A DNA stretch of 64,000 bases from Diadema antillarum (Eukaryota). The notes under the pieces are model-generated. The model was not told the origin of the DNA. It saw nothing but the letters and a program-made list of their open reading frames with translations, and searched no databases. The stretch spans positions 186,001 through 250,000 of the forward strand of contig NW_027271821.1 of the NCBI RefSeq assembly GCF_040938485.1, read 5' to 3'. This document shows, piece by piece, positions 8,164 to 21,610 of this stretch. Both the position numbers and the translations under genes were made by a program. Within the stretch, counting starts at the first letter, position 1; each line of letters starts with the position of its first letter.

Positions 8164-11100
8164 TTAAATGTCATCCACGGATAAAATTTATCCTCATAAT
8201 AGTGCCGTTAATCATCGGTTACAATCTCCTTCTTTGTTTTTTATTCAAATATTTTCAAGCCGCTATGAAATGATATTTTTAAATGTCGTATCCCATCCTT
8301 GGTGTATAGTTGAGTGAGTGAGACACTATATCACCTGACTGTTGTGACCAAATAATACTTGTCTTGGCTTTTAACACCGCTTGTTCGTACAAAGTTCACT
8401 CATGATAAATCTTTATCAGAGTCGAATTGTCAATTTCAGACAAGTCAAGGGAAGTGCTATTACATGTACGGCCTATCGTTGCAGGGTTTGGACTGAAAAT
8501 AAAAGCTCGACACAGATAAAGCTGCAAAATAGCGTTACTTGCGCCAACTGCATGTGGGCGTGCGTTGTCCCTATTTACCAATACCAGTGAACACACAGTC
8601 GATTCAGGGGGGTGCAGACTGGTCATAATGGAGCTGCACCTGTAGCTGCACTTGATCTCAGTTCAAGTGTTCCGATATCACATCCCCGTTCCCCTTTAAA
8701 CTGCAGCAGCTCCATGCAGCTTATTCGCAGTATTGTCTGGATTTTTTCGTTGTCTGTTTTCTCTCTTCTCCTCCCCATCACCGCCGCTGTCCTAGATCTC
8801 TGTCTGAGTGAGAGATTGAGTCTCGCTTTTTCGCTTTCTTCACGATCTCTCTTCCAACCGATGACCACTAATCGATGACTAAAACAGTCAAAGTCTGCTA
8901 ATACCTTGTAATAGTGACTGCATGGAGTCCTCTTGCTGACGCCACGTTTTCCCAACGTTGACACATTGCCAGGTACATCGTCAAGACGTGAATTTCCAAA
9001 GGATTCAGCCCGATAGAGGGTAAAGCATCATGTCGTTCAAGAGTAATAGTCTGGTAGGAATGGGGGGTCCCCATGCACCCCCGAACACATTTTTTTTAAC
9101 TTACTTTTTTGTAACCCTTAGGGTGTCTAGTTAATGAATTTTTTTGTTCCCAAGAAAAAAATCGTGTCCCATGGGGGTCATTGGCGGCCATCTTGGCAGC
9201 CATCTTGGATTTTCAGGGAAAATCATTATCTTCCATAACTTTTGAACTACACAGCATAGAATTATAAATAAAGCATTTCTGCAGGGTAAACATGACACAA
9301 GGAATCGATTGCAATGGTTATTTACATGATTAAAGCAAGTCTGAAACAAGAAAAGCCTAAAAACATGCAAATTTCGGTGTCATTTTCACCGAAAACTATC
9401 CAAATAGTTTAACTTTTGAATTACACAACATACAGGGACAAATAAAACAGTAATTCAGAGTTAATATGGCATGAGGAATCGTTTGAGAGAGTTATTTACA
9501 TGATTAAAGCAAGTTACATACAAGAAAAGTCCAAACATGCGAGGAAAACCAGTGTCGTTTACTCTAGAAATATTCCCAAGTAGTCTATATACATATATAC
9601 ATGACAATCTCATACCTCCTAAGAGTAAACTTACCTCTTTTTCTTAACAGTCTGGTAGGAAAGGGGGGGGGGGATCCCGTGCACCCTCATTTTTGTATCC
9701 CTTAGGGTGTCTATTTGATTTTTTTTTTTGTCTCCAAGTGAAAATCGTGTCACATGGGGGTCATTGGCAGCCATCTTGGATTTGCGAGGAAAATCATTAG
9801 TTTCTATAACTTTTGAAGTTTCCAACATACAAGGAAAAATAAAACATTTTTTCAGGGTATATGTGACATGAGAAATCGATTGAGATGGTTATTTACATGA
9901 TTAAAAAATGCTTGATACAAGAAAAGTCCCAAATATGATAAATTCTGTATCGGTTACACTGAAAAGTACCCAAATAGTTCAACTTTTGAACTATACAGAA
10001 CATACAGGGACAAATAAAACATTTCTTCAGACGAAACACAGCATGAGGAATCAATTGAGATTGTCATTTACATAATGAAAGCAAGTTTGACACAAGAAAT
10101 GTCCCAAAACTGAAAAATTAAGTGCTGTTACTCTGGAAATGGCCCAAATATTTCATGCTACATACATGACAAATTGCATACCTCACAAAAGTGACTAACA
10201 ACTCTGTCTTTAGATCATTGCCCAAATAGGCCTTTTTTGTTTTGTATCAAAAACATTAAATAGAATCTGAAGAGAAAATTAATTTCAAGCATTGTCACCC
10301 CTCACTTGGTGAAATAGAATAAGAATGTAAGCACTGTGGTAATTCATATGCAAATACCCTTAAAAAGAGGTGACACATGATAATAATGTTGATCACAACA
10401 CTTAAAAGTGACTAATGGACAAAGATAAAACTGGAACTTAAATTTGATACTCTTTGTGCGCGTTCAATTTCGTTTCATTTTATATTTAAAACGAGTTTGA
10501 GTTGGGATATATTCAAGGAAACAATCACTGTGTCAAAATGTCGAGCCGATTTCAAAAATTTAGATGCCAAAATGGTTTCATTTATTCTCAAGTTAAAAAA
10601 GCAGTTCATTCAATAATGTATTTGTTTAAAGTTTATTGTCCGAAAACAAAAAGAGAAACATTTCATTTGACAGCCGGAAATCTAGCCTGTGAATAGGGAC
10701 TGTATATCAATGTGGATTGCTGCTACTTTAATTTAGAAATATTTGCATGTGAATCGCTTTTGTGCTTACATCCTGTATGCATTCAATTCAAGTTCACATT
10801 GATTGGAATTAAGTTTCCTTTCGAATTCTGTTAAAAGTTGTCTGATATAAGACGCAATATTCAAGCTATTATCAAAAGACATAATGATATTTTGAAAGGG
10901 TTAGTCACATACCGATTAGTGATTGGCTGAACACAGTCACGTGATGGAAGTATACATTCGTTATGTTGGCCCACGGGCGAACATTCTTGTAATGTTCTCC
11001 CATGGGAAAACATTTCCACGTGATGGACCGCAGCGCACTTATAACCTCCCTCAATAGCATTTCAAACCCTTCGGGTGGAACATTGGGTATGTTCCCTCCG

Positions 11101-11306
11101 CCGCCAGTCATCATCTATATATTTCAACGTTTGTGACATGTGTATATGCTTTTCATGAAGTATGGAATTAACGTATATTGAAAAAATATAAAGTAACACA
11201 ATATGACTTCACTTTTCTTAAAAAGTATTCTGAATGCTCACCCTGTGTAACTGTACAAACCACAGAAGCGGTTATGCGATATATCAGGTTTTCATTTCAC
11301 ACTTCT

Positions 11307-12330
11307 TTAATTTCTATACCGGTAGTCATCATCAAAACGATCATTGTAATCAATGTCTGGGTCCTCTTCTTCATCCTCCTTCATTTCCTCAGTAATTTTC
11401 TGAAGCAAGTCAATGAGGGAAGTCGGAAAGATAGGGCCACTTGACCACACTGGCTCCATCATAACAAAGGCTACTTTCTGCCATCCTTGTCGTCCAGAAT
11501 CAAAGGAGTCATATACAGAGCACCAGAAGAATGGTTGGTCAGCTCTCTTTAAGATGGCAAGGCGATGGGTCACACATTTAATGTGTGGGATAAGGTTGTC
11601 TCTGCAAGGTGTATATGAGCATGAAGAAATCCACATTGGAGTTTGTCGTCATTTGTTCGCCCTCTCCCATCATCTGCTTTGGATGATGCTGCTGTAAATA
11701 GACTTCTCCACCTCTTATGGTCATACATTAGGCATGTGAATGCTCCAATGTCTTCTGTCACCTCTTATTGGCTCTACAGACCACCCATCTCCAAGGTTTA
11801 AGTGGGGGACGAAAAAACATTGGCACATTTCAAAATCATGTTGTAAGATTTCTGCAGTGTTCATTATAATGTAATATTGAACAATTTACCACATTTCAGT
11901 AAAATATTGCAGAGATTATAATGTCATACTACTCTCTCCTGAATGCTGTATGGTACATGGGGTGGCTTTGTAGATTCTTTAGGGGTCCGACTTTGCCCCT
12001 ACTCTTGAAGGCACTTGTTACATCTTCCCCTGTAAGCACATGTCGTCCAAGTATTGTGGTACAGTAGCCCGCTCCCTTTGATTCAGTATGCCAGTTCAAC
12101 AACATTCACAATCTGGCAATGCTCGACAGTCCATTTATAAAGGAGGATAGTGAGGGTGACGGAGTGAGATGGCGCAAGAAGATCAAGAAAATGTCTGTGT
12201 CTGGTGTCCTTACCACAGCTGCTTTGTACCCAAGCTTAATAGTGGAATACTCGAGGTAGAGCGCTACCCTGGTGTCCTTCTCCTGGTTAGACGGCAGCTC
12301 ATGGATAGAGCTTATTGTCTCCTGGGATGA
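11307..12330 (-). pseudogene. Decayed C-terminal XPG/FEN1-like nuclease segment of an Academ transposase (left copy)
   Basis: The minus strand reads SNQEKDTRVALYLEY..LGYKAAVVRTPDTDIFLI, CTTILGRHVLTGEDVTSAFK, KVGPLKNLQSHPMYHTAFR, then an intron remnant, then PCRDNLIPHIKCVTHRLAILKRADQPFF..EPVWSSGPIFPTSLIDLL and an acidic tail; it has frameshifts and stops. Confidence 0.7.
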
Positions 12331-12429
12331 GTAATTAGGTGAACAAAAAGAATGTAACAGGAATCACTTAAGCTTCAGAGAATGTGATTTCTGTTACATT
12401 CCTTTTGTTTACACAATGATATGTTCCAA

Positions 12430-13200
12430 GAGACAATGGCGCGATATCCATGAGTGACTGTCTAACCAGTATAAGAAGACGGACACCAGGGTCGTGCTTT
12501 ACCTCAAGTGCGCTGCTAAACTTAGGTACAAGGTAGCTTTGGTGAGGGATCCAGACACACATTTCCTTGATCCCCTTGGTCCTTGCTTAATCCATTCTAC
12601 AATGTAGTATCTTTCTTAATAAACGGACTGTCACGTATTGCCAGGTTGTCAATGTCAATTAACTTGCATTTATATAGAATCAACGGGAGCTCATATACTG
12701 TATACCAAAATACCTGGACTACCGGGGAAGATGTAACAATTAAAGTGCCTTAATGGGTTGGGAAAAGTTGGACCCCTAAAGAATCAACAAAAGCCACCCC
12801 ATATACCACATAGCATTCAGGTGAGAGTTGTTTGATTTCGTGATTTCAGAAGTATTTTACTGAAATCTAATAAGTTGCTCAGTATTATATCATAATAAAC
12901 ACTACTAAAATATTAGAATATGACTATACAATATGCCAAGTTGAGTGTTTTTTCCTCACAAATCTTGGTGATGGGTGGTCTGTGGAGCCAGAGGTGACAG
13001 ATGACATGGAAGCATTCACATGCCTAAAATGTATAGCGAGGTCCGGGAGAAGTCTATCATAATGGCGTTCGCAGCATCATGCTGAAACAGATGGTGGGAG
13101 AGGGCGAGCAACTGATGACCAAATCCAAGGTGGATTTCTCCTTGCTCCCACCTGGCAGAGGCAACCTTATCTCACACTTTCAATGTGTGATTTACTGACT
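12430..13200 (+). pseudogene. Second decayed copy of the same XPG-like segment in the opposite orientation (right copy)
   Basis: The plus strand reads TDTRVVLYLKCAAKLRYKVALVRDPDT, with DNA matching the TGEDVT, GKVGPLK and GDGWSVEP segments of the left copy and an intron remnant at the same position (cattcag|gtgaga); about 70-75% identical to the left copy by eye. Confidence 0.65.
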
Positions 13201-16190
13201 TTCCTCTCAAATAAAAAATGGCCGCCAATGACTCCCCCCCCCCCCCGACACGATTATTACTTGGAAACAAAAAAAAAATCATCATCTAATAGACACCTTG
13301 AAGGGATACAAAAATTTAGGGTGCATGAGGATCCCCCATTCCTAGACTTTAGTGGTTAGTCAATCATATGAGGTATATAATTGTCATGTATGTATATGGA
13401 CTATTTGGGCAGAGCAAACAACACTGTTTTTTTATTCGCATGTTTGCATTTTTCATGTATCATAATTGTTTTAATCATGTAAATAACAATGTCAATCGAT
13501 TCCTCATGCCAAATTTACCCTGGAGAAATTATTTATTTGTCCTTGTATGTTGGAAACTTCAAAAGTTATAGAAATTAATGATTTTCCTCGCAAATCCAAG
13601 ATGGCTGCCAATGACCCCCCCCCCCATGTGACACGATTTTCACTTGGAGACAAAAAGAATCAAATAGACACCCTAAGGGATACAAAAAGGAGGGTGCATG
13701 GGACCCCCCACCCCCCATTCCTACCAGACTGTTAAGAAAAAGAGGTTAGTTTACTCTTAGGAGATATGAGATTGTCATGTATGTATGTATATAGACTACT
13801 TGGGAATATTTCTAGAGTAAACGACACTGGTTTTCCTCCCATGTTTGGACTTTTCTTGTATGTAACTTGCTTTAATCATGTAAATAACTCTCTCAAACGA
13901 TTCCTCATGCCATATTAACTCTGAATTACTGTTTTATTTGTCCCTGTATGTTGTGTAATTCAAAAGTTAAACTATTTAGGTATTTTTCGGTGAAAATGAC
14001 ACCGAAATTTGCATATTCTTAGGCTTTTCTTGTTTCAGACTTGCTTTAATCACGTAAATAACCATTGCAATCGATTCCTCGTGTCACGTTTACCCTGAAG
14101 AAATGCTTTATTTATAATTTTATGCTGTGTAGTTCAAAAGTTATGGAAGATAATGATTTTCCCTGAAAATCCAAGATGGCTGCCAAGATGGCCGCCAATG
14201 ACCCCCATGGGACACGATTTTTTCTTGGGAACAAAAAAAAAAATCATTAACTAGACACCCTAAGGGTTACAAAAAAGTAAGTTAAAAAAATGTGTTCGGG
14301 GGGTGCATGGGGACCCCCCATTCCTACCAGACTATAAGAGTAAGAGAGAGTGTGTAGACGACTTTGAACGAGATGCCAAGGAGTTCATCGAACTGATGAT
14401 GTACCGATTCTACCAGGGAGGTTCGGATGAAGAGATCACCCTACACGACAGTCGTCAAGCTTTCAAACGGTACGTCCACCATAGATTTTCATACTTGAAA
14501 ATCATTATCGAAGTTAGTTTAAAGGCTTGAAATGTTGATGTTCTCTAATTAAGGCTCCAGAGTGTCTGTTATGAAGAGCAGGGGCGCAAAAGCGCTTTGA
14601 ATGAGTAAAGGGCGGCATTAATCGATATTTGATGGCAACCGAGAAGTGGAACGGATTGATAAGCATTGTCGTCTGTTGTAGATGTTCAGCAAACTTTCGA
14701 TCCATAGAGTACTGAGTGTTTTCTGCTGATGAAAGAACTCCATAGGCTTTGCAGAATGTTACAGAGAGAGAAGAGGGCATAGATTCCATGGGACCTGGGC
14801 GTGACTATACGACACTTCAGTGTTATTATAACAAGGAGTTACCATAGCGAGCGTGCTGTCTTGTATTATAGTTACTCCTTAGCTTATACTTCGATAGTAA
14901 CCTTCCGTGGTCTCACCAACGAGCTTAATTGGTCTCACAGAAGGTTTGTGTGTTTGCAATGCGACTGCGCTGCCAGCATTAACACTTTTTTTTATGTAAG
15001 CATGTATTTTGTGCTCAGACACAAAACTGTATTGCTTGGATCGTGAGGGTGTTGATACCGTACAGCTATCTCAAGGCGGATGTCAGAGTTCCTCTGTGAT
15101 GGGTCAGCTAATTTGTCCCCTTGGAAAGGGACCGCACCTCTATTCAAACAAAATGGAGCTATCGCTGCCATAGTGGTTTGGAAAAAAAGTCTCTAATAAA
15201 AGCTATTCTGATTTTTTTTAAAGACTCTATAGTTTCCTACAATAAAAAGTTAAATACCATGATGACAAGATGGCCACTGTCAAGAAATTGCCGAGACTTC
15301 GTGAGAATCAAATTTTTCTTTGTGACTGAACAAGAATTGTTCCAAGTGATTTCCAATATTTTGGTATAGTGTAGGCCCTAGAAGTAAACTGTTCAAAGTT
15401 TAATCAAATGACCAAGAATATAGCTTCCAGACAATTTCTAACTGTTCCGACACAAAGATACTTTATGAAGGATCGAGTCACGCTTTTGTAAACAATTTAG
15501 TTAAAACTTTGGGACTCTGCGTGTGGTGCTTTCCTTTGTTCAAGTATCTGACACTTCGCCTATTCTTATGATTTATTCATAATTACCGAGTAGATGTCAC
15601 TCTTAATCGTCATTATGAACATGTAACTTCTATAGAGACATATAAAAAAAAAAAAAAACATTGGTTTCCAGCACATAGCCCATGTACCTTCAGTAGTTTA
15701 AGGGTGTTGCATTTCTTTCTTTTTTTTCATCGTTTTTTTAGAGGCGACAAGGAGTATGGAAAAAGGAAACGCCTGCTCAGCGATGCATCGGTGTTTTATG
15801 ACAGATGTTACATTTAATGTATCAATGTTACACCTGTCACACTCTTCTTCCCGTTTAGTGGAAGTCTTGCTTCTTTTCTTGCTCCAAAACCCCGCCATGT
15901 TTAACTGCTGACGAATGCACAGGTCTACCCATTTCTTCACATGTTGTTGTTCGCGCATTCATTTTGCAAATCGATTTCACACTTCAGATATCGCTTCCGA
16001 CCTATGATTCTTCGCGACGTCTCGAACAGAGATATTTCGACCACGATACTGGGTCACCGAATCGCCTTTCCTTGTTGCATCTCGCCCTCGGCTTTCCATA
16101 AGGGTGCGCATCCTGATGGGGAGTTGACCACTGCGATGGGTAAGAATAATAATATGATGTATGAAGTATTATTATATCCCTACGTATATG

Positions 16191-16254
<64 letters not shown>

Positions 16255-16310
16255 TATATGTATATAATATATATATGTTGATAAGGTAGTCCACGTGTTG
16301 GCAAGATAAA

Positions 16311-16524
16311 AAGATAAGTAACAAGGCTGCAACAAAGTTCATGCTGTATTCACCAACGGTTTATTTCTTCACACAAATTTTCGAGCGTCTCGCCGCCCTT
16401 TCTCAAGTGTTGATACTCAAGTATCAACACTTGAGAAAGGGCGGCGAGACGCTCGAAAATTTGTGTGAAGAAATAAACCGTTGGTGAATACAGCATGAAC
16501 TTTGTTGCAGCTTTGTTACTTATC

Positions 16525-16526
<2 letters not shown>
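16311..16526. repeat. Near-perfect palindrome (107-bp arms, 2-nt loop) within a (TA)n-rich tract, HAO-A intron 2; probable hairpin MITE
   Basis: 16311-16417 is the reverse complement of 16420-16526 with one mismatch seen; (TA)n tracts at about 16190-16276 and 16528-16566. Confidence 0.9.
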
Positions 16527-16571
<45 letters not shown>

Positions 16572-16576
16572 GTATA

Positions 16577-16665
16577 TATATATGAAGAGCTTGCTTCCAA
16601 AAGGCGCTAAATCCATCATTTTTCAATGGATTTAGCGCCTTTTGGAAGCAAGCTCTTCATATATA
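16577..16665. repeat. Second palindrome (40-bp arms, 9-nt loop) embedded in TA repeats
   Basis: tatatatgaagagcttgcttccaaaaggcgctaaatccat / catttttca / exact reverse complement. Confidence 0.9.
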
Positions 16666-19039
16666 ATAGACATCATCGACGGTGGTCTTCTTCTCACACG
16701 CAGCTACGAGAAATAGAGGCAGGCAGAGGAGTGAACGTTGGACCGTGTCTCACTGATAATAAGAATCATCTGTGTGCCCTGTCTAAAGGAATATTCATTC
16801 ATATATGCGATTCCACATCAAGCTGGTTTTGACTTTGATGAAAATGAGTAAATTAGAGTCGTCAAAATTAGTGGCAAGTTTGCAATAAGAAAAAAGATTA
16901 ATCACCTTTGGGTTTTTATTTTGTTTTGTTTTTGTTTTTGTTTTTTGTGAATCCAGGGCAGATTTGTATAAGTGAAGGCATGGCTTTCCTCATTTCCTCC
17001 GGTACTGAGCAGGCCTATACATAACATTTCTCAACTGTCAACCAGTGCGAACTAAACAAGATAGTCAAAATTGGGCTTCTACAACGAGCCACTGTTGCCT
17101 GTCAATGAATCCCTTTTTCTGTTAAACTACCCCCGACGCTCATCACAGTTTGACCCCGGAACCATGACCTAATCTAACACTGTTTTATAAACACATGGTA
17201 TTTCTTTTGCTTGACCAAAGCGGCTGCATCCCGGAACGTAGGGATGTCACTGAGCTGTGGATCCAATGTCCTGATTGAAGATATCGCCAAGGCTGCCCCC
17301 AACGGACTGAAAATGATGCAGATGTACATCTACAAAAACAGAAAAATTTCAGAGTTATTCGTAAGGCGAGCGGAGAAAGCCGACTTTAATGGTATAGTAC
17401 CAATATTACGTACGAAACGCTGTTTACTGGGATTGCTGGTGTACTTTTGATGGCTCATCCTACAGAAATATACGTGACAAATCAATCAAATCAATCAAAT
17501 CAATCAAATAATCAGCTGATGTAGATAAATGTGCTCCTTTAAGTTGGGTGTACTGAATTTTACCCCGGGAGCTTGGTGCATGTGTCTGTTAATTTGGATT
17601 AACCGTTATGTGAGTATAGTCAGCTATTTTATTTCTTTTTTTGTATCGCTATCTTTGAATTTAACCAAGTACGAAAAGTCCCTAATTTACCCTTTTTGTA
17701 TGTATTCTATCTGCTACAACTACTTACGTCACTCTGATGCACAACATGAGAAGAGGAATAGCTTGCTTTCATTACAATATTCGCGAAGTGATGAACAGAT
17801 TGTATGTTACCGGGTTCTGAATGGAATTTCTTCTTCGGTCAAGTATCAGGCGTTTCAGTACTATCTTGATTTCTTTTTGCATGAATACCTGTTTTAGCCA
17901 TGTTAGTGATTGTTGACTTCGCTGTATACGGAAAGAGAAGGGGAGAACGGGATGACAACTTTTATCAGACGACCAGAGAGAATCCAGCTTACGCACATCT
18001 TGAGTAAGAATTGTATAATATCAATTCATATTTTATTAACAAAAGTGTGACGTAGACGCTATGATGTTGTTGGAAATGTCCTCGATTGTTTGTTTTTGTC
18101 AGTAATCTCTCCACATAGCGAATTCTCCATTAGTGCGTAAAATATATAGTTTAGATGCACTTCAAATATTTGGAATAATGCAGTCAAACTGACTTTTTAC
18201 ATTCTCCCCATACGAGGGACTATTCTAGTAGTTGATTTTTTTTGTTCACTCATCTTGTGGTCTAAGATTCATCTGTGAGTATTATTCCTGCCATAAAACG
18301 GATGACTCTTAGGCACGTAATGCAATTACTAACCAGCTACGAGGAATGTCAAACAAAGACAAAAAGAACGAAAAAGAAACAAAATAGATCAAAGATCTGT
18401 GAAAAAAAAATCACTATAGATCACTACCAATAACAAACAAAACCACCATTGAATACACCTCTCATTTATTCTATACAGGGAAAAAAAGTCACCTTTGCAT
18501 AGACAGCAAATGCTGTGAAAGTATCCAAGTTTGGTATTGTTTGGCCGTTGATTTTTCCATATTATATAGGTCCACATAAGCTGCCCTACCGGAGGAGATA
18601 AAGAAAAATGCGACTTTTCAATCAAATGACAATAAAGCTGATCTTTTTTTTCCCTGAAAAAAGGTCAAAAAGTACAATTTCGGTGCAGACCGACATTTTC
18701 TACTTGTACGCGTCAACGCTAAACCGTTTCTCTTTTTAATCCTTCATTGATTGAAGCCAATATTGCTGGTATAGTGTAATTTTCTTCGTAGATGCGTGAA
18801 CATGAACATGATGGGGGAAGAAGCGCGGAGAGAAAAAGCCGCTGGAGACACGCTGCTTTGGGTCTACAACGACCAAGCCGACTGCTCTGCGACCTGGGAG
18901 GACATCAAGTGGGTCAAACGCATCTCATCCATACCAGTGGTGGTCAAAGGTGTTCTCACAGGTATTAAAGACTATGGAATCTGTCAAACTTCCAACTTAG
19001 CGAGAGATTCCGCTGCATTTATCTGCTTTCATTTCGTTT

Positions 19040-19640
19040 CGGTTCTGTATGTCTGTTCGTCTATCTGTCTACCTGTCTGTCTATCTGTCTGTCTACAAGA
19101 TAACTCGAGAACGGAAGACCGGATTTTCACCAAGCTTAATATAGTAAGAGAGAAACTTTAAATTTTGGCTGGTGACGTCAAAAGTCAGAGGTCAAAGGAT
19201 CATAAAATAAAATGTCAAAAAAAAAACAGCTTTATATCTTAATAACTCAAGAACAGACAATTTGATTTTTACCAAACTTACAAACTGTGGTCATAATAAG
19301 TAAAACATAATCGCTATTTTTATTATGGGCTCAAGAACAAACAATTTGACATTTACCAAACTTACAGACTGTGGTCATAATAAGTAAATCATAATCGCTA
19401 TTTATTATGGGGTCATGGTCAAAGGTCATAGGGGTCATGAAAGACATGAAATGAACTTAATCTCCCAATGATTCAAGAACGAGTGATCGGATTATCTCCA
19501 TGCTTGCAGGATGTTTCATAATGAAGTAAGAAAGGGGAATTTGGGGTCATGAGGTCTAAGGTCAAAGGTCATGAAGTCATAGAGGACATAAAATAAGTTT
19601 AATATCTCAATGACTCAGCAATAAACGATTTGATTTTCAC
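19040..19640 (+). mobile_element. Interspersed repeat with a (CTGT)n microsatellite and degenerate internal tandem units (DINE-1/Helentron-associated-like), HAO-A intron 5
   Basis: (ctgt)n at about 19055-19095, followed by about five variants of ataactcaagaac...gattttcaccaaactt and gtcaaaggtca motifs; the family assignment is by architecture only. Confidence 0.45.
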
Positions 19641-21189
19641 CAAATGTATTGTACAGATGTCCGAACCTCTGTGTTTGTGTTGAAGATACTGCCAACGAAA
19701 TGGCGATATTTTATTCCGCCGTCCCTGGTAATATTTGCCATTATCGTTATACTAGTATTGTTTCTCCGACACAATTGTTTTCAATCATTTTTTTTTCTGC
19801 AACAGGCGAGATGGCACGCGAGGCTGCGGCGGCCGGGGTAGACGGGATCTTGGTCTCGGCTCACGGCGGCAGGCAGCTGGACTCAGCCATAGGCCCAGTT
19901 AGTTTTCAAATCCAACTTGACTTTTAAACTCAACTTCTAAGAAATTACACTTTTTTTTCGGTTGATTTTTTTTTCTCGAGTAGGCCTATGCAAGACATTA
20001 CGGAAGGCCTATTTGTAGCATATGAAAATGACGATGTGGCTGTTTTATTGATACTGTACTTCAGTTTATTGATCGTTTTGTTGCAGTCATTCGGTGGGAA
20101 GACATTGGACATTTGACAACTTGTTAAGAGCTGTTCTCATGTTAATCATACTTGCACTTAATCACGCGTATCTCTAATTATACTCCTCATAAGTAGCTGT
20201 TTACATTTTTATCATTAGGCAGTAGTCGTGTAGGTTAAATATCCAGTCATATTCTCAGATAGAAAAAGTAACAAACAAGTAATGATGATTGTAATTTTCA
20301 ATAAGAAGAAAATGTCAATGAATGGTTCTTATCATCATTATCAACCTCTTTGTATGTCATGACTATCTATAACATTATCAATAATGGATGTCGTTTGTCA
20401 GAAGTTATATAACTCTGTTTTATCGTCTTTCTGTACCAGCTTGATGCTCCCCCTGAAGTAGTTGAAGCTGTACGTGGTACCAATGTAGAAGTTTACGTTG
20501 ATGGAGGCGTGCGTACTGGGGCGGACATACTCAAGGCACTCGCCCTGGGAGCCCGGGCCGCCTTCATCGGCAGACCGGCGATATGGGGCCTTGGATGTGG
20601 GGTATGCATATTTCACTTGCCTACGGAGTGTAGAACAGGCTCTTTATTCTTTTGTATTAAAATCCAATGTATTACTCTCTCCTAGGACCTGGTAATGAAT
20701 TGTATGTTCAACTTCTCATACTATTATAGTTCTGTACTATATAATATGCACTGTCGTCCCTGTAAACCAAAGATTACATTGATGTGAACAAGGTACATCC
20801 GTTCCCTGGACAATCATCAATTCTGATGTATCAAAATCAATATATGTCACTTAAGTGTCTTGTCATGCTGCTGTAATTTTTGTGGTTGTGATTTCATTTT
20901 GTGTTTATTTCCGAAATCTATCCTCCCTCACAGGGTGAAGATGGCGTGAAAGAAGTCCTAGACATTTTAAAGGATGAATTCGACAGAGCAATGGCATTAA
21001 CAGGCTGGTACGCAATCGCCTATCTTTATGTTTACTTTTATATTCCATGAGGCAATAAACACAAATTTGTTTCCGATGCAAAGCATGTTGGAGTACATTG
21101 CATGCAGGCATGCCGCTTTCGATCCTTTTTGTCTCGCCCACCGGAGGTGAAGGCGAGACTAAGGGATCCAAATGGCGTCCGTCCGTCGT

Positions 21190-21610
21190 CATGTTATGGG
21201 GTTGTTGGAGGTCATGTGATGATGTCAAAAGTCATTTGAGGTCATATATTAAAGAGTATGTGCAAGGCTCTCTTTTCTATGTTAAAGTTTACCTGCAAGA
21301 CTCTCTTTTGACAAATAACTTCACATAAGTTGCTTGGATTACAACCTAACTTGGGGCGTAGATGCACTGGGAGTACCTTCATGTTATGGTGCCGTTGGAG
21401 GTCACAGGATAAGGTCAAAGGTCATTTGAGGTCATACGTTAAAGTTTACTTGCAAGACTCTCTTATCACACGTAACTCGACACATGTTGCTACAATGGCA
21501 ATCAAACTTGGGTGGTGGATGCACTGGTTGCACCTTCATGTTATGGTGCCGTAAGAGGTCACATGATAAGGTCAAAGGTCATTTGAGGTCATACGTTAAA
21601 GTTTACTTGC
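21190..21610 (+). repeat. Tandem repeat of about 157-bp units rich in AGGTCA, HAO-A intron 8
   Basis: aggtcaaaggtcatttgaggtca at 21412 and 21569 (157 bp apart), with a degenerate unit near 21223. Confidence 0.75.

What the first reader, a model, noticed from the sequence alone, without database searches (positions are those of the whole stretch)
9043..14338. The transposon may be removable as an intron: its right TIR provides a 3' splice site that restores the HAO-A frame
Seen: the element ends ccccccattcctacCAG|ACTA, a pyrimidine tract plus CAG at 14328-14330. The phase-1 GT donors at 9043 (A|GTAATA) and 9049 (A|GTCTGG) joined to 14331 give in-frame MSFK-NY-KSKRECVDD or MSFKSN-NY-KSKRECVDD. 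The donor at 9054 (G|GTAGGA) is out of frame with that acceptor but in frame with the AG at 14337-14338. Because the terminus TAGTCTGGTAGG and its complement carry both GT and CAG, any copy of this family would bring splice sites in either orientation. Inference: possible intronisation by an Academ element; the donors are weak, and an inner copy of the acceptor near 13728 would compete.
Basis: inference. Interest (0 to 1): 0.7.

Follow-up and report, generated by a model that had tools for sequence, protein, structure and literature searches.

The report
Young transposon splitting an oxidase gene
A very recent 5.3-kb DNA transposon sits in the sixth codon of a hydroxyacid oxidase gene; the splice-like signals at its ends are real, but the strongest pair restores no reading frame and no RNA data could be obtained, so it is best read as an ordinary insertion allele, not a new intron.

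Summary
The element is window 9047-14334 (5,288 bp). It has ~630-bp terminal inverted repeats and a 3-bp target duplication (TAA). It splits codon 6 of HAO-A exon 1.

The decisive test could not be run: no RNA run was listed, so no reads could be laid.

Indirect evidence leans against a frame-restoring spliceosomal intron:
- The best donor (9054) with the best acceptors (13728 or 14331) gives frameshifts and early stops.
- The three in-frame joins each need a weaker site.
- The footprints are fixed by the ends: +14 nt for the strong pair, +9 nt for the weak one. The claim that any copy would be removable therefore fails in general.
- The subfamily is very young (copies 98.7-99.2% alike).
- A sister copy sits heterozygously in codon 14 of a GPCR gene, where the +9 footprint creates a stop.
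- HAO-A is absent from the allelic haplotig.
- HAO-A also carries a GT-to-GC change at its intron-8 donor.

Removal at the RNA level remains possible by another known route: inverted-repeat-triggered "SOS splicing" (PMC12779559).

The scan had already noted this insertion (s1-215151).

Verdict: a known kind of event. The intron claim is untested and moderately unlikely.

The parts
9030..9046 (+). Start codon and first 17 coding bases of HAO-A exon 1 (MSFKS + AA of codon 6)
   Evidence: The paralog g1 begins MSFKPKSKRVCVDD at the homologous place.
9044..9046 (.). Left copy of the 3-bp target-site duplication, TAA
   Evidence: In 22 of 23 family copies inspected, a perfect 3-bp duplication flanks TAGTCTGG...CCAGACTA.
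9047..14334 (.). Non-autonomous long-TIR DNA transposon, 5,288 bp, no ORF over 109 aa
   Evidence: Sister copies of 5,278-5,288 bp are 98.7-99.2% identical.
9047..9673 (.). Left terminal inverted repeat. It holds the candidate donors at 9049 and 9054. A second terminus-like copy follows at 9647-9668, with an identical ctg|GTAGGA at 9655.
   Evidence: I1, I10, D14; 97.2% identity to the right arm over 635 aligned bases.
13706..14334 (.). Right terminal inverted repeat. It holds the inner acceptor copy (CAG 13725-13727) and the terminal acceptor (CAG 14328-14330).
   Evidence: I1, I10, D17.
11307..11636 (-). 109-aa open remnant of the family's protein (C-terminal piece), inside a fold-back interior
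   Evidence: 150 scored matches in the genome, many 96-100% identical; no Pfam family.
14335..14337 (.). Right copy of the target-site duplication, TAA
14338..14469 (+). Rest of HAO-A exon 1, up to the donor ACG|GTACGT. It holds the AG at 14337-14338 used in the third proposed join, and an unused host GT at 14340 (aga|GTAAGA).
   Evidence: (FMN_dh positions 1-33).
15988..22208 (+). HAO-A exons 2-9: 15988-16139, 17221-17391, 17898-18003, 18792-18961, 19806-19897, 20440-20601, 20934-21003 and 22141-22208. All are open. The protein ends in SRL.
   Evidence: With the rebuilt exon 1 the model sums to 1,140 nt, which is 379 codons plus a stop (my arithmetic).
21004..21005 (+). Intron-8 donor reads GC (cag|GCTGGT). 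Paralogs g1 (both haplotigs), the C752 copy and g4 all read GT.

Best explanation
A non-autonomous cut-and-paste transposon inserted very recently into codon 6 of the first exon of HAO-A. It has ~630-bp inverted ends and a 3-bp target duplication, and looks AcademX-like. HAO-A is one member of a tandem, copy-number-variable cluster of peroxisomal hydroxyacid oxidase genes.

Shown: the insertion, its borders, its youth, and the frames of every proposed join.

Inferred:
- Unprocessed mRNA stops after 34 codons.
- If the spliceosome uses the transposon's own signals, it should prefer G|GTAGGA (9054, or its twin at 9655) with CAG| at 13727 or 14330. Those joins give frameshifted RNAs with early stops.
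- The three in-frame joins need weaker sites and would be minor products.
- The allele is therefore most likely null or strongly reduced. It is tolerated because the family is large and the other haplotype lacks this gene altogether.
- It is an insertion allele, not an established intron.
For: - Borders and 3-bp duplication.
- Rebuilt empty site: MSFKSKSKRECVDD, the same length as paralog g1 (MSFKPKSKRVCVDD).
- Youth: sister copies are 98.7-99.2% identical over 5.3 kb. By contrast, dS is 0.129 between HAO-A and g1.
- Site scores and ranks.
- Translated joins.
- Unspliced product: 34 aa.
- Polyadenylation-like hexamers: 12 AATAAA or ATTAAA on the sense strand inside the element.
- Second exonic copy of the same subfamily: in codon 14 of an intronless 7tm_1 receptor gene, filled on contig C50 and empty on C198. 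It is a segregating insertion.
- HAO-A has no second allele in a largely diploid assembly. The allelic haplotig C1382 is 99.1-99.8% identical around g1 and carries g1 followed by a g4-like gene only.
- Second lesion candidate: the GC donor in intron 8.
Against: - No RNA was seen, so nothing here measures splicing.
- The rest of HAO-A is intact and evolved under constraint (dN/dS 0.11 against g1). That figure reflects history before the insertion.
- The N-terminal residues differ between paralogs, so any in-frame product would probably work.
- Real donors of these genes are themselves weak: GTATAG, GTTAGT and GTATTA occur. A host GT at 14340 scores 7.4 yet is not used. The 15-site matrix therefore discriminates poorly.
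- Exonic inverted-repeat transposons are removed from 90-100% of host mRNAs in C. elegans (PMC12779559).
Confidence: 0.6

Rival explanations
1. The spliceosome removes the element as a GT-AG intron. It uses 9043 or 9049 with the CAG at 14330, or 9054 with the AG at 14338. This yields a working oxidase with one to three changed or added N-terminal residues, at a level that matters (a tenth of transcripts or more).
For: All three joins are in frame. Acceptor 14331 scores 5.1, which is the median of 16 real acceptors, with 72% pyrimidines upstream. Donor 9054 scores 7.8, in the upper half of the real donors. The N-terminus is variable between paralogs. Singular transposon-derived introns are reported in many eukaryotes (PMC11282704).
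Against: The good donor and the good acceptor are out of frame with each other. Donor 9043 scores 4.5 (rank 35 of 331) and 9049 scores -0.8 (rank 191). The AG at 14339 scores 1.4 and follows a better CAG by 8 nt. The inner acceptor at 13728 (score 6.0) is transcribed first and leaves 606 nt of transposon with stops. The tract is C-rich, with T at 17% against 22-78% in real sites. No RNA support exists.
Confidence: 0.1
2. The element is cut out of the mRNA by the non-spliceosomal, inverted-repeat-triggered system described as SOS splicing. The two ~630-nt arms pair in the transcript, and the RNA is cut at several places near the ends and religated by RTCB. This would give a mixture of products, of which a part is in frame. 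Function is partly rescued because the site lies in a poorly conserved N-terminus.
For: The arms are 97.2% complementary over 635 nt. Predicted pairing energy for the outer 300 nt is -520.6 kcal/mol, against -139.7 for shuffled arms. The element lies in a coding exon. CAAP1 and RtcB domains are encoded in this genome. [quoted passage not shown] Tc3 and Tc4 are also excised, and the system works in human cells (PMC12779559).
Against: The system has been shown only in a nematode and in human cells. AKAP17A was not looked for here. No substrate of 5.3 kb was reported in the parts of the paper that I read. Such a long duplex could instead draw editing or silencing. The authors note that recent exonic insertions are rare, that is, purged despite the system. 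No RNA data exist for this locus.
Confidence: 0.2
3. Transcription starts inside or reads out of the right arm, and translation starts at the in-frame ATG ATG at 14396-14401. This would give an oxidase lacking its first 28 residues.
For: The frame is open from 14264 through the end of the element into exon 1. Two in-frame ATGs lie at 14396 and 14399.
Against: An out-of-frame ATG at 14373 comes first. There is no evidence of a promoter in the arm. The Pfam FMN_dh match starts at residue 14 of the exon-1 piece, before these ATGs, so the product would lose the start of the domain.
Confidence: 0.05

Closest known systems
Exonic Tc1, Tc3 and Tc4 insertion alleles of C. elegans removed from mRNA (SOS splicing; Zhao et al. 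2025, PMC12779559)
   Same: A cut-and-paste transposon with inverted ends sits in a coding exon. One studied case, Tc1::rsd-3, is likewise in the first coding exon. Removal would be imprecise, and rescue depends on frame and on a tolerant protein region. CAAP1 and RtcB domains are encoded here.
   Different: No excision has been observed here. The element is 5.3 kb with ~630-nt arms. The host is a different animal lineage.
Introners: intron-generating DNA transposons (Micromonas IE1 and others; PMC11282704, PMC9860276)
   Same: Inverted ends and a 3-bp target duplication, with splice-like motifs carried by the element's ends.
   Different: Introner families have median lengths of 30-654 nt. 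They are defined by many copies that are introns. They usually leave mRNA length unchanged, with one site often taken from the duplication. Here the element is 5,288 bp and its strong pair leaves 14 bases. Only 2 of 23 inspected copies touch host coding sequence.
AcademX transposons (nuclease-encoding Academ lineage)
   Same: The 3-bp target duplication matches the 3 or 4 bp stated for AcademX (PMC10045372). The element has long inverted ends. A language-model search gave a faint pointer to 5'-3' exonuclease-like folds (scores 0.76-0.78).
   Different: No XPG domain was detectable in this copy or in larger copies. Pfam XPG_I matched only 7 places in the genome, none at the listed positions of the family's copies. 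No autonomous copy was recovered.
Peroxisomal (S)-2-hydroxyacid oxidase / glycolate oxidase family (Pfam FMN_dh, PF01070)
   Same: Exons match FMN_dh positions 1-33, 32-85, 80-141, 229-261 and 260-311. The C-terminus is SRL.
   Different: In this genome the family is greatly expanded: 117 exon matches on many contigs. HAO-A is interrupted.

Membership tests
Introner (intron-generating transposon) | Many near-identical copies that are themselves spliceosomal introns of unrelated genes | tested here: not met
   Of 23 insertion sites with flanks in hand, 2 lie in host coding sequence (HAO-A and one receptor gene). 2 lie in retrotransposon ORFs. The rest show no long open frame across the rebuilt site. 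No copy is shown to be spliced. The sample is small.
Introner (intron-generating transposon) | Element plus duplication supply a splice pair whose use leaves the mRNA unchanged or changed by whole codons | tested here: not met
   The strong element-borne pair leaves 7+4+3 = 14 bases. Only the weak donor TA|GTCTGG (score -0.8) gives +9. In the receptor gene, +9 reads as a TAA stop (my reading).
Introner (intron-generating transposon) | Short length (family medians 30-654 nt; PMC9860276) | tested here: not met
   This copy is 5,288 bp. Family copies are 5.3-9.5 kb.
AcademX | Target-site duplication of 3 or 4 bp | tested here: met
   22 of 23 copies, including this one, have perfect 3-bp duplications. 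The criterion comes from PMC10045372.
AcademX | Autonomous copies encode a transposase with an XPG-type nuclease | tested here: inconclusive
   No Pfam hit for the open remnants. The XPG_I genome scan found 7 places, none at the listed positions of the family's copies. The atlas gave only weak XRN and 5'-3' exonuclease pointers. No long ORF appeared in any fetched copy.
SOS-splicing substrate | Inverted terminal repeats able to pair within an exon of the mRNA | tested here: met
   The arms are 97.2% complementary over 635 nt with strongly negative cofold energy. The exonic position follows from the gene model.
SOS-splicing substrate | Host encodes AKAP17A, CAAP1 and RTCB | tested here: inconclusive
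   The CAAP1 domain scores 43.2 bits. RtcB exons are present on two haplotigs. AKAP17A was not searched, because I had no family accession or referenced sequence for it.
SOS-splicing substrate | Element absent from mRNA but present in DNA, with borders mostly not GU-AG | not testable with these tools
   No sequencing run was listed.
FMN-dependent hydroxyacid oxidase (PF01070) | FMN_dh domain across the protein, with catalytic His-Gly-Gly-Arg and Lys motifs | tested here: met
   Exon-wise matches to PF01070. The translated exons contain VVVKG and SAHGGRQLD.

The most novel reading that the evidence does not exclude
This young long-TIR family may give a natural test-bed outside nematodes and cultured human cells for inverted-repeat-directed removal of DNA transposons from mRNA. 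Two segregating insertions lie within the first 14 codons of host genes: HAO-A, and a receptor gene with both filled and empty alleles in one animal. The family's apparent taste for the very start of coding regions would then make sense.
Probability: 0.2. Interest if true: 0.6.

Novelty: new member of a known kind. Interest (0 to 1): 0.3.

Why it matters
If the element were cleanly removed from the transcript, this would be a caught-in-the-act case of a large transposon turning into an intron, or being excised by the recently described SOS system, in an animal where neither has been described. As it stands, it is a well-defined, very recent exonic insertion allele. It lies in a redundant, copy-number-variable gene family. 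A sister insertion has filled and empty alleles in the same individual. That makes it useful material for a simple RT-PCR test, but it is not evidence for intron birth.

Tried and rejected
- **RNA evidence.** The look-up of sequencing runs on the gene body (14336-22400) listed no run, and its single search was then spent. Read laying was therefore never used.
- **Public protein fragments.** A word search with the exon-1 ORF (candidates of 48-154 aa) found nothing. Full-length models are outside that tool's length range. Exons were handled one by one, by reference.
- **An 8-bp target duplication (hAT- or P-like).** Rejected. 22 other copies show 3 bp, and the 3-bp reconstruction matches the paralog's length.
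- **PIF/Harbinger or CACTA (also 3-bp duplications).** The duplications are AT-rich but not TWA-restricted (CTT, CCA, TGT and ATG occur). The termini are TAGTC, not CACTA.
- **XPG domain.** Nothing from Pfam on six plus six open remnants. A genome-wide XPG_I scan hit none of the listed family copies.
- **Search for an autonomous copy.** Fetched copies of 8-9.5 kb hold nested insertions, for example a reverse-transcriptase ORF in L051. None holds a long transposase ORF.
- **Fetching the rest of paralog g1 and haplotig C1382.** The haplotype comparison therefore rests on match tables and six short loci.
- **Assembly artefact.** Considered and judged unlikely. The junctions are exact, with a family-typical duplication.
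Full report
**What is there**

The window is soft-masked animal DNA with about 38% G+C. It lies on contig C933 of a 1.75-Gb assembly in which many loci appear twice, as haplotigs.

At 9030 an ATG opens MSFKS. After 17 coding bases the sequence TAGTCTGGTAGGAATGGGGGG begins. Its exact reverse complement ends at 14334. The arms pair over about 630 nt: 535 nt at 96% and 103 nt at 91% without gaps, or 97.2% over 635 aligned bases with gaps. The interior holds no ORF over 109 aa.

After the element the frame continues KSKRECVDDFERDAKEF..., which matches the start of Pfam FMN_dh. Eight further exons follow, down to a C-terminal SRL. With the rebuilt first exon the nine exons sum to 1,140 nt, that is 379 codons and a stop (my arithmetic).

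**Borders**

AAGAGTAA occurs on both sides and looks like an 8-bp duplication. It is not. In 22 of 23 other copies the ends TAGTCTGG...CCAGACTA are flanked by perfect 3-bp duplications such as CTT, TAT, ATT, TTA, AAA, CCA, TGT, ATG and TAA.

With a 3-bp TAA duplication the empty site reads MSFKSKSKRECVDD. That is exactly as long as the upstream paralog g1 (MSFKPKSKRVCVDD). The host exon simply carried a tandem AAGAGT.

The element is therefore 9047-14334 and splits codon 6. A 3-bp duplication fits what is stated for the nuclease-encoding Academ lineage (PMC10045372). I could not show an XPG domain, either in open remnants or by a genome-wide XPG_I scan. A language-model search gave only weak exonuclease-like pointers.

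- Note 1: GT 9043 is host sequence.
- Note 2: the family termini are conserved at about 460 ends, so every copy does carry the motifs in either orientation.
- Note 3: because these motifs sit at fixed distances from the ends, the footprints are fixed too. G|GTAGGA with CAG|ACTA leaves 7+4 bases plus the 3-bp duplication, 14 in all. That is never a multiple of three. TA|GTCTGG with CAG|ACTA leaves 9 bases, nnnTAACTAnnn, which is a stop in one phase of three.

**Strength of the sites**

I derived 15 donors and 16 acceptors from HAO-A and the second HAO gene of the window (g4), and built crude log-odds matrices from them.

| Site | Score | Rank |
|---|---|---|
| Real donors (leave-one-out) | -2.8 to 9.5, median 6.8 | |
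| Donor 9054 | 7.8 | 3rd of 331 GT, tied with its twin at 9655 |
| Donor 9043 | 4.5 | 35th of 331 |
| Donor 9049 | -0.8 | 191st of 331 |
| Real acceptors (leave-one-out) | -2.3 to 14.7 | |
| Acceptor 14331 | 5.1 | 17th of 292 AG |
| Acceptor 13728 (inner copy) | 6.0 | 13th of 292 |
| Acceptor 14339 | 1.4 | 59th of 292 |

The best donor with either good acceptor gives an early stop. The matrix is weak evidence. Real donors here include GTATAG and GTTAGT, and an unused host GT at 14340 scores 7.4.

**Age and population status**

Copies of the same 5.28-kb deletion derivative are 98.7-99.2% identical. HAO-A and g1 differ by dS 0.129, with dN/dS 0.11 over 222 codons of six exons. The gene was therefore functional for a long time and the insertion is far younger.

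One sister copy (C50:1685848-1691558) lies in codon 14 of an intronless rhodopsin-type receptor gene. The allelic contig C198 has the empty site and a complete 468-aa ORF with a full 7tm_1 match. That insertion is heterozygous, and there the +9 footprint would read as a stop.

**Status of HAO-A itself**

Its flanks and exon 8 find no second allele anywhere, only g1 at 79-93%. Haplotig C1382 is 99.1-99.8% identical to C933 around g1. It carries g1 followed by a gene with the spacing and scores of g4. The sequence downstream of HAO-A is 97-100% identical to that downstream of g1 on both contigs. The simplest reading is a roughly 45-kb copy-number difference, so that HAO-A exists on one haplotype only.

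HAO-A also reads GC at the first two intron bases of intron 8 (21004-21005), where g1 on both haplotigs, a copy on C752 and g4 all read GT. Use of the next GT, at 21008, would add 4 nt and lose the SRL end.

**What could not be done**

No sequencing run was listed, so no reads were laid. No short protein fragments were found.

**Mechanism**

The best-supported reading is a fresh insertional allele, most likely null or weak. It is tolerated because the family is large (117 exon matches) and this member is dispensable on the other haplotype.

Removal at the RNA level is not excluded. In C. elegans and human cells, exonic transposons are excised by a system triggered by pairing of the inverted ends. 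The borders are rarely GU-AG, and only some products are in frame (PMC12779559). The long arms here would pair strongly, and CAAP1 and RtcB domains are encoded.

Introners are the other comparison. The element fails their defining features of size, copy location and footprint (PMC11282704, PMC9860276).

**Verdict**

This is a known kind of event.

Noticed in passing
window 21004-21005: The HAO-A intron-8 donor is GC (cag|GCTGGT). Three paralogs and both haplotigs of g1 have GT there. The next GT, at 21008, would add 4 nt and remove the peroxisomal SRL end. This may be a second lesion or a rare GC-AG intron.
   Followed up: partly
window 1-64000 against contig C1382 (loci L002, L005, L061): The allelic haplotig carries only two HAO genes (g1 and a g4-like gene), where C933 carries four. 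HAO-A and its neighbour g2 appear to lie in a ~45-kb copy-number-variable segment. The sequence downstream of HAO-A (22400-28000) is 97-100% identical to that downstream of g1, although the genes differ by 2-5% in the exons compared and the 5' flanks by 21%.
   Followed up: partly
L058:501-6211 (C50:1685848-1691558) and L067:1462-2865 (C198): A 5,711-bp copy of the same young subfamily interrupts codon 14 of an intronless rhodopsin-type receptor gene. The other haplotig has the empty site and an intact 468-aa ORF. Counting HAO-A, 2 of 23 inspected insertions lie within the first 14 codons of a gene. This hints at a preference for gene starts.
   Followed up: partly
window 24870-25977: A ~1.1-kb repeat is present in dozens of copies at 92-99% identity across the genome. 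It is absent from the otherwise near-identical segment downstream of g1. This is another recently active element.
   Followed up: no
contig C198 (548789 forward and 3210316 reverse); contig C2 (L022 and L023): The whole receptor gene cluster appears twice on C198 in mirror order with identical scores. One transposon end with its flank appears twice on C2 in inverted orientation, 680 kb apart. These are either large inverted duplications or palindromic assembly artefacts.
   Followed up: no
L056 and L057 (C699 and C1079): One family copy, present on both haplotigs, lacks a target duplication (TTC against TAT). This could follow recombination between two copies, or a mutated flank.
   Followed up: no
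window 9039-9046 and 14336-14343: The host exon contained a tandem AAGAGT AAGAGT. After insertion this mimics an 8-bp target duplication. It also places donor-like GTAAGA motifs inside the first exon that are evidently not used.
   Followed up: yes
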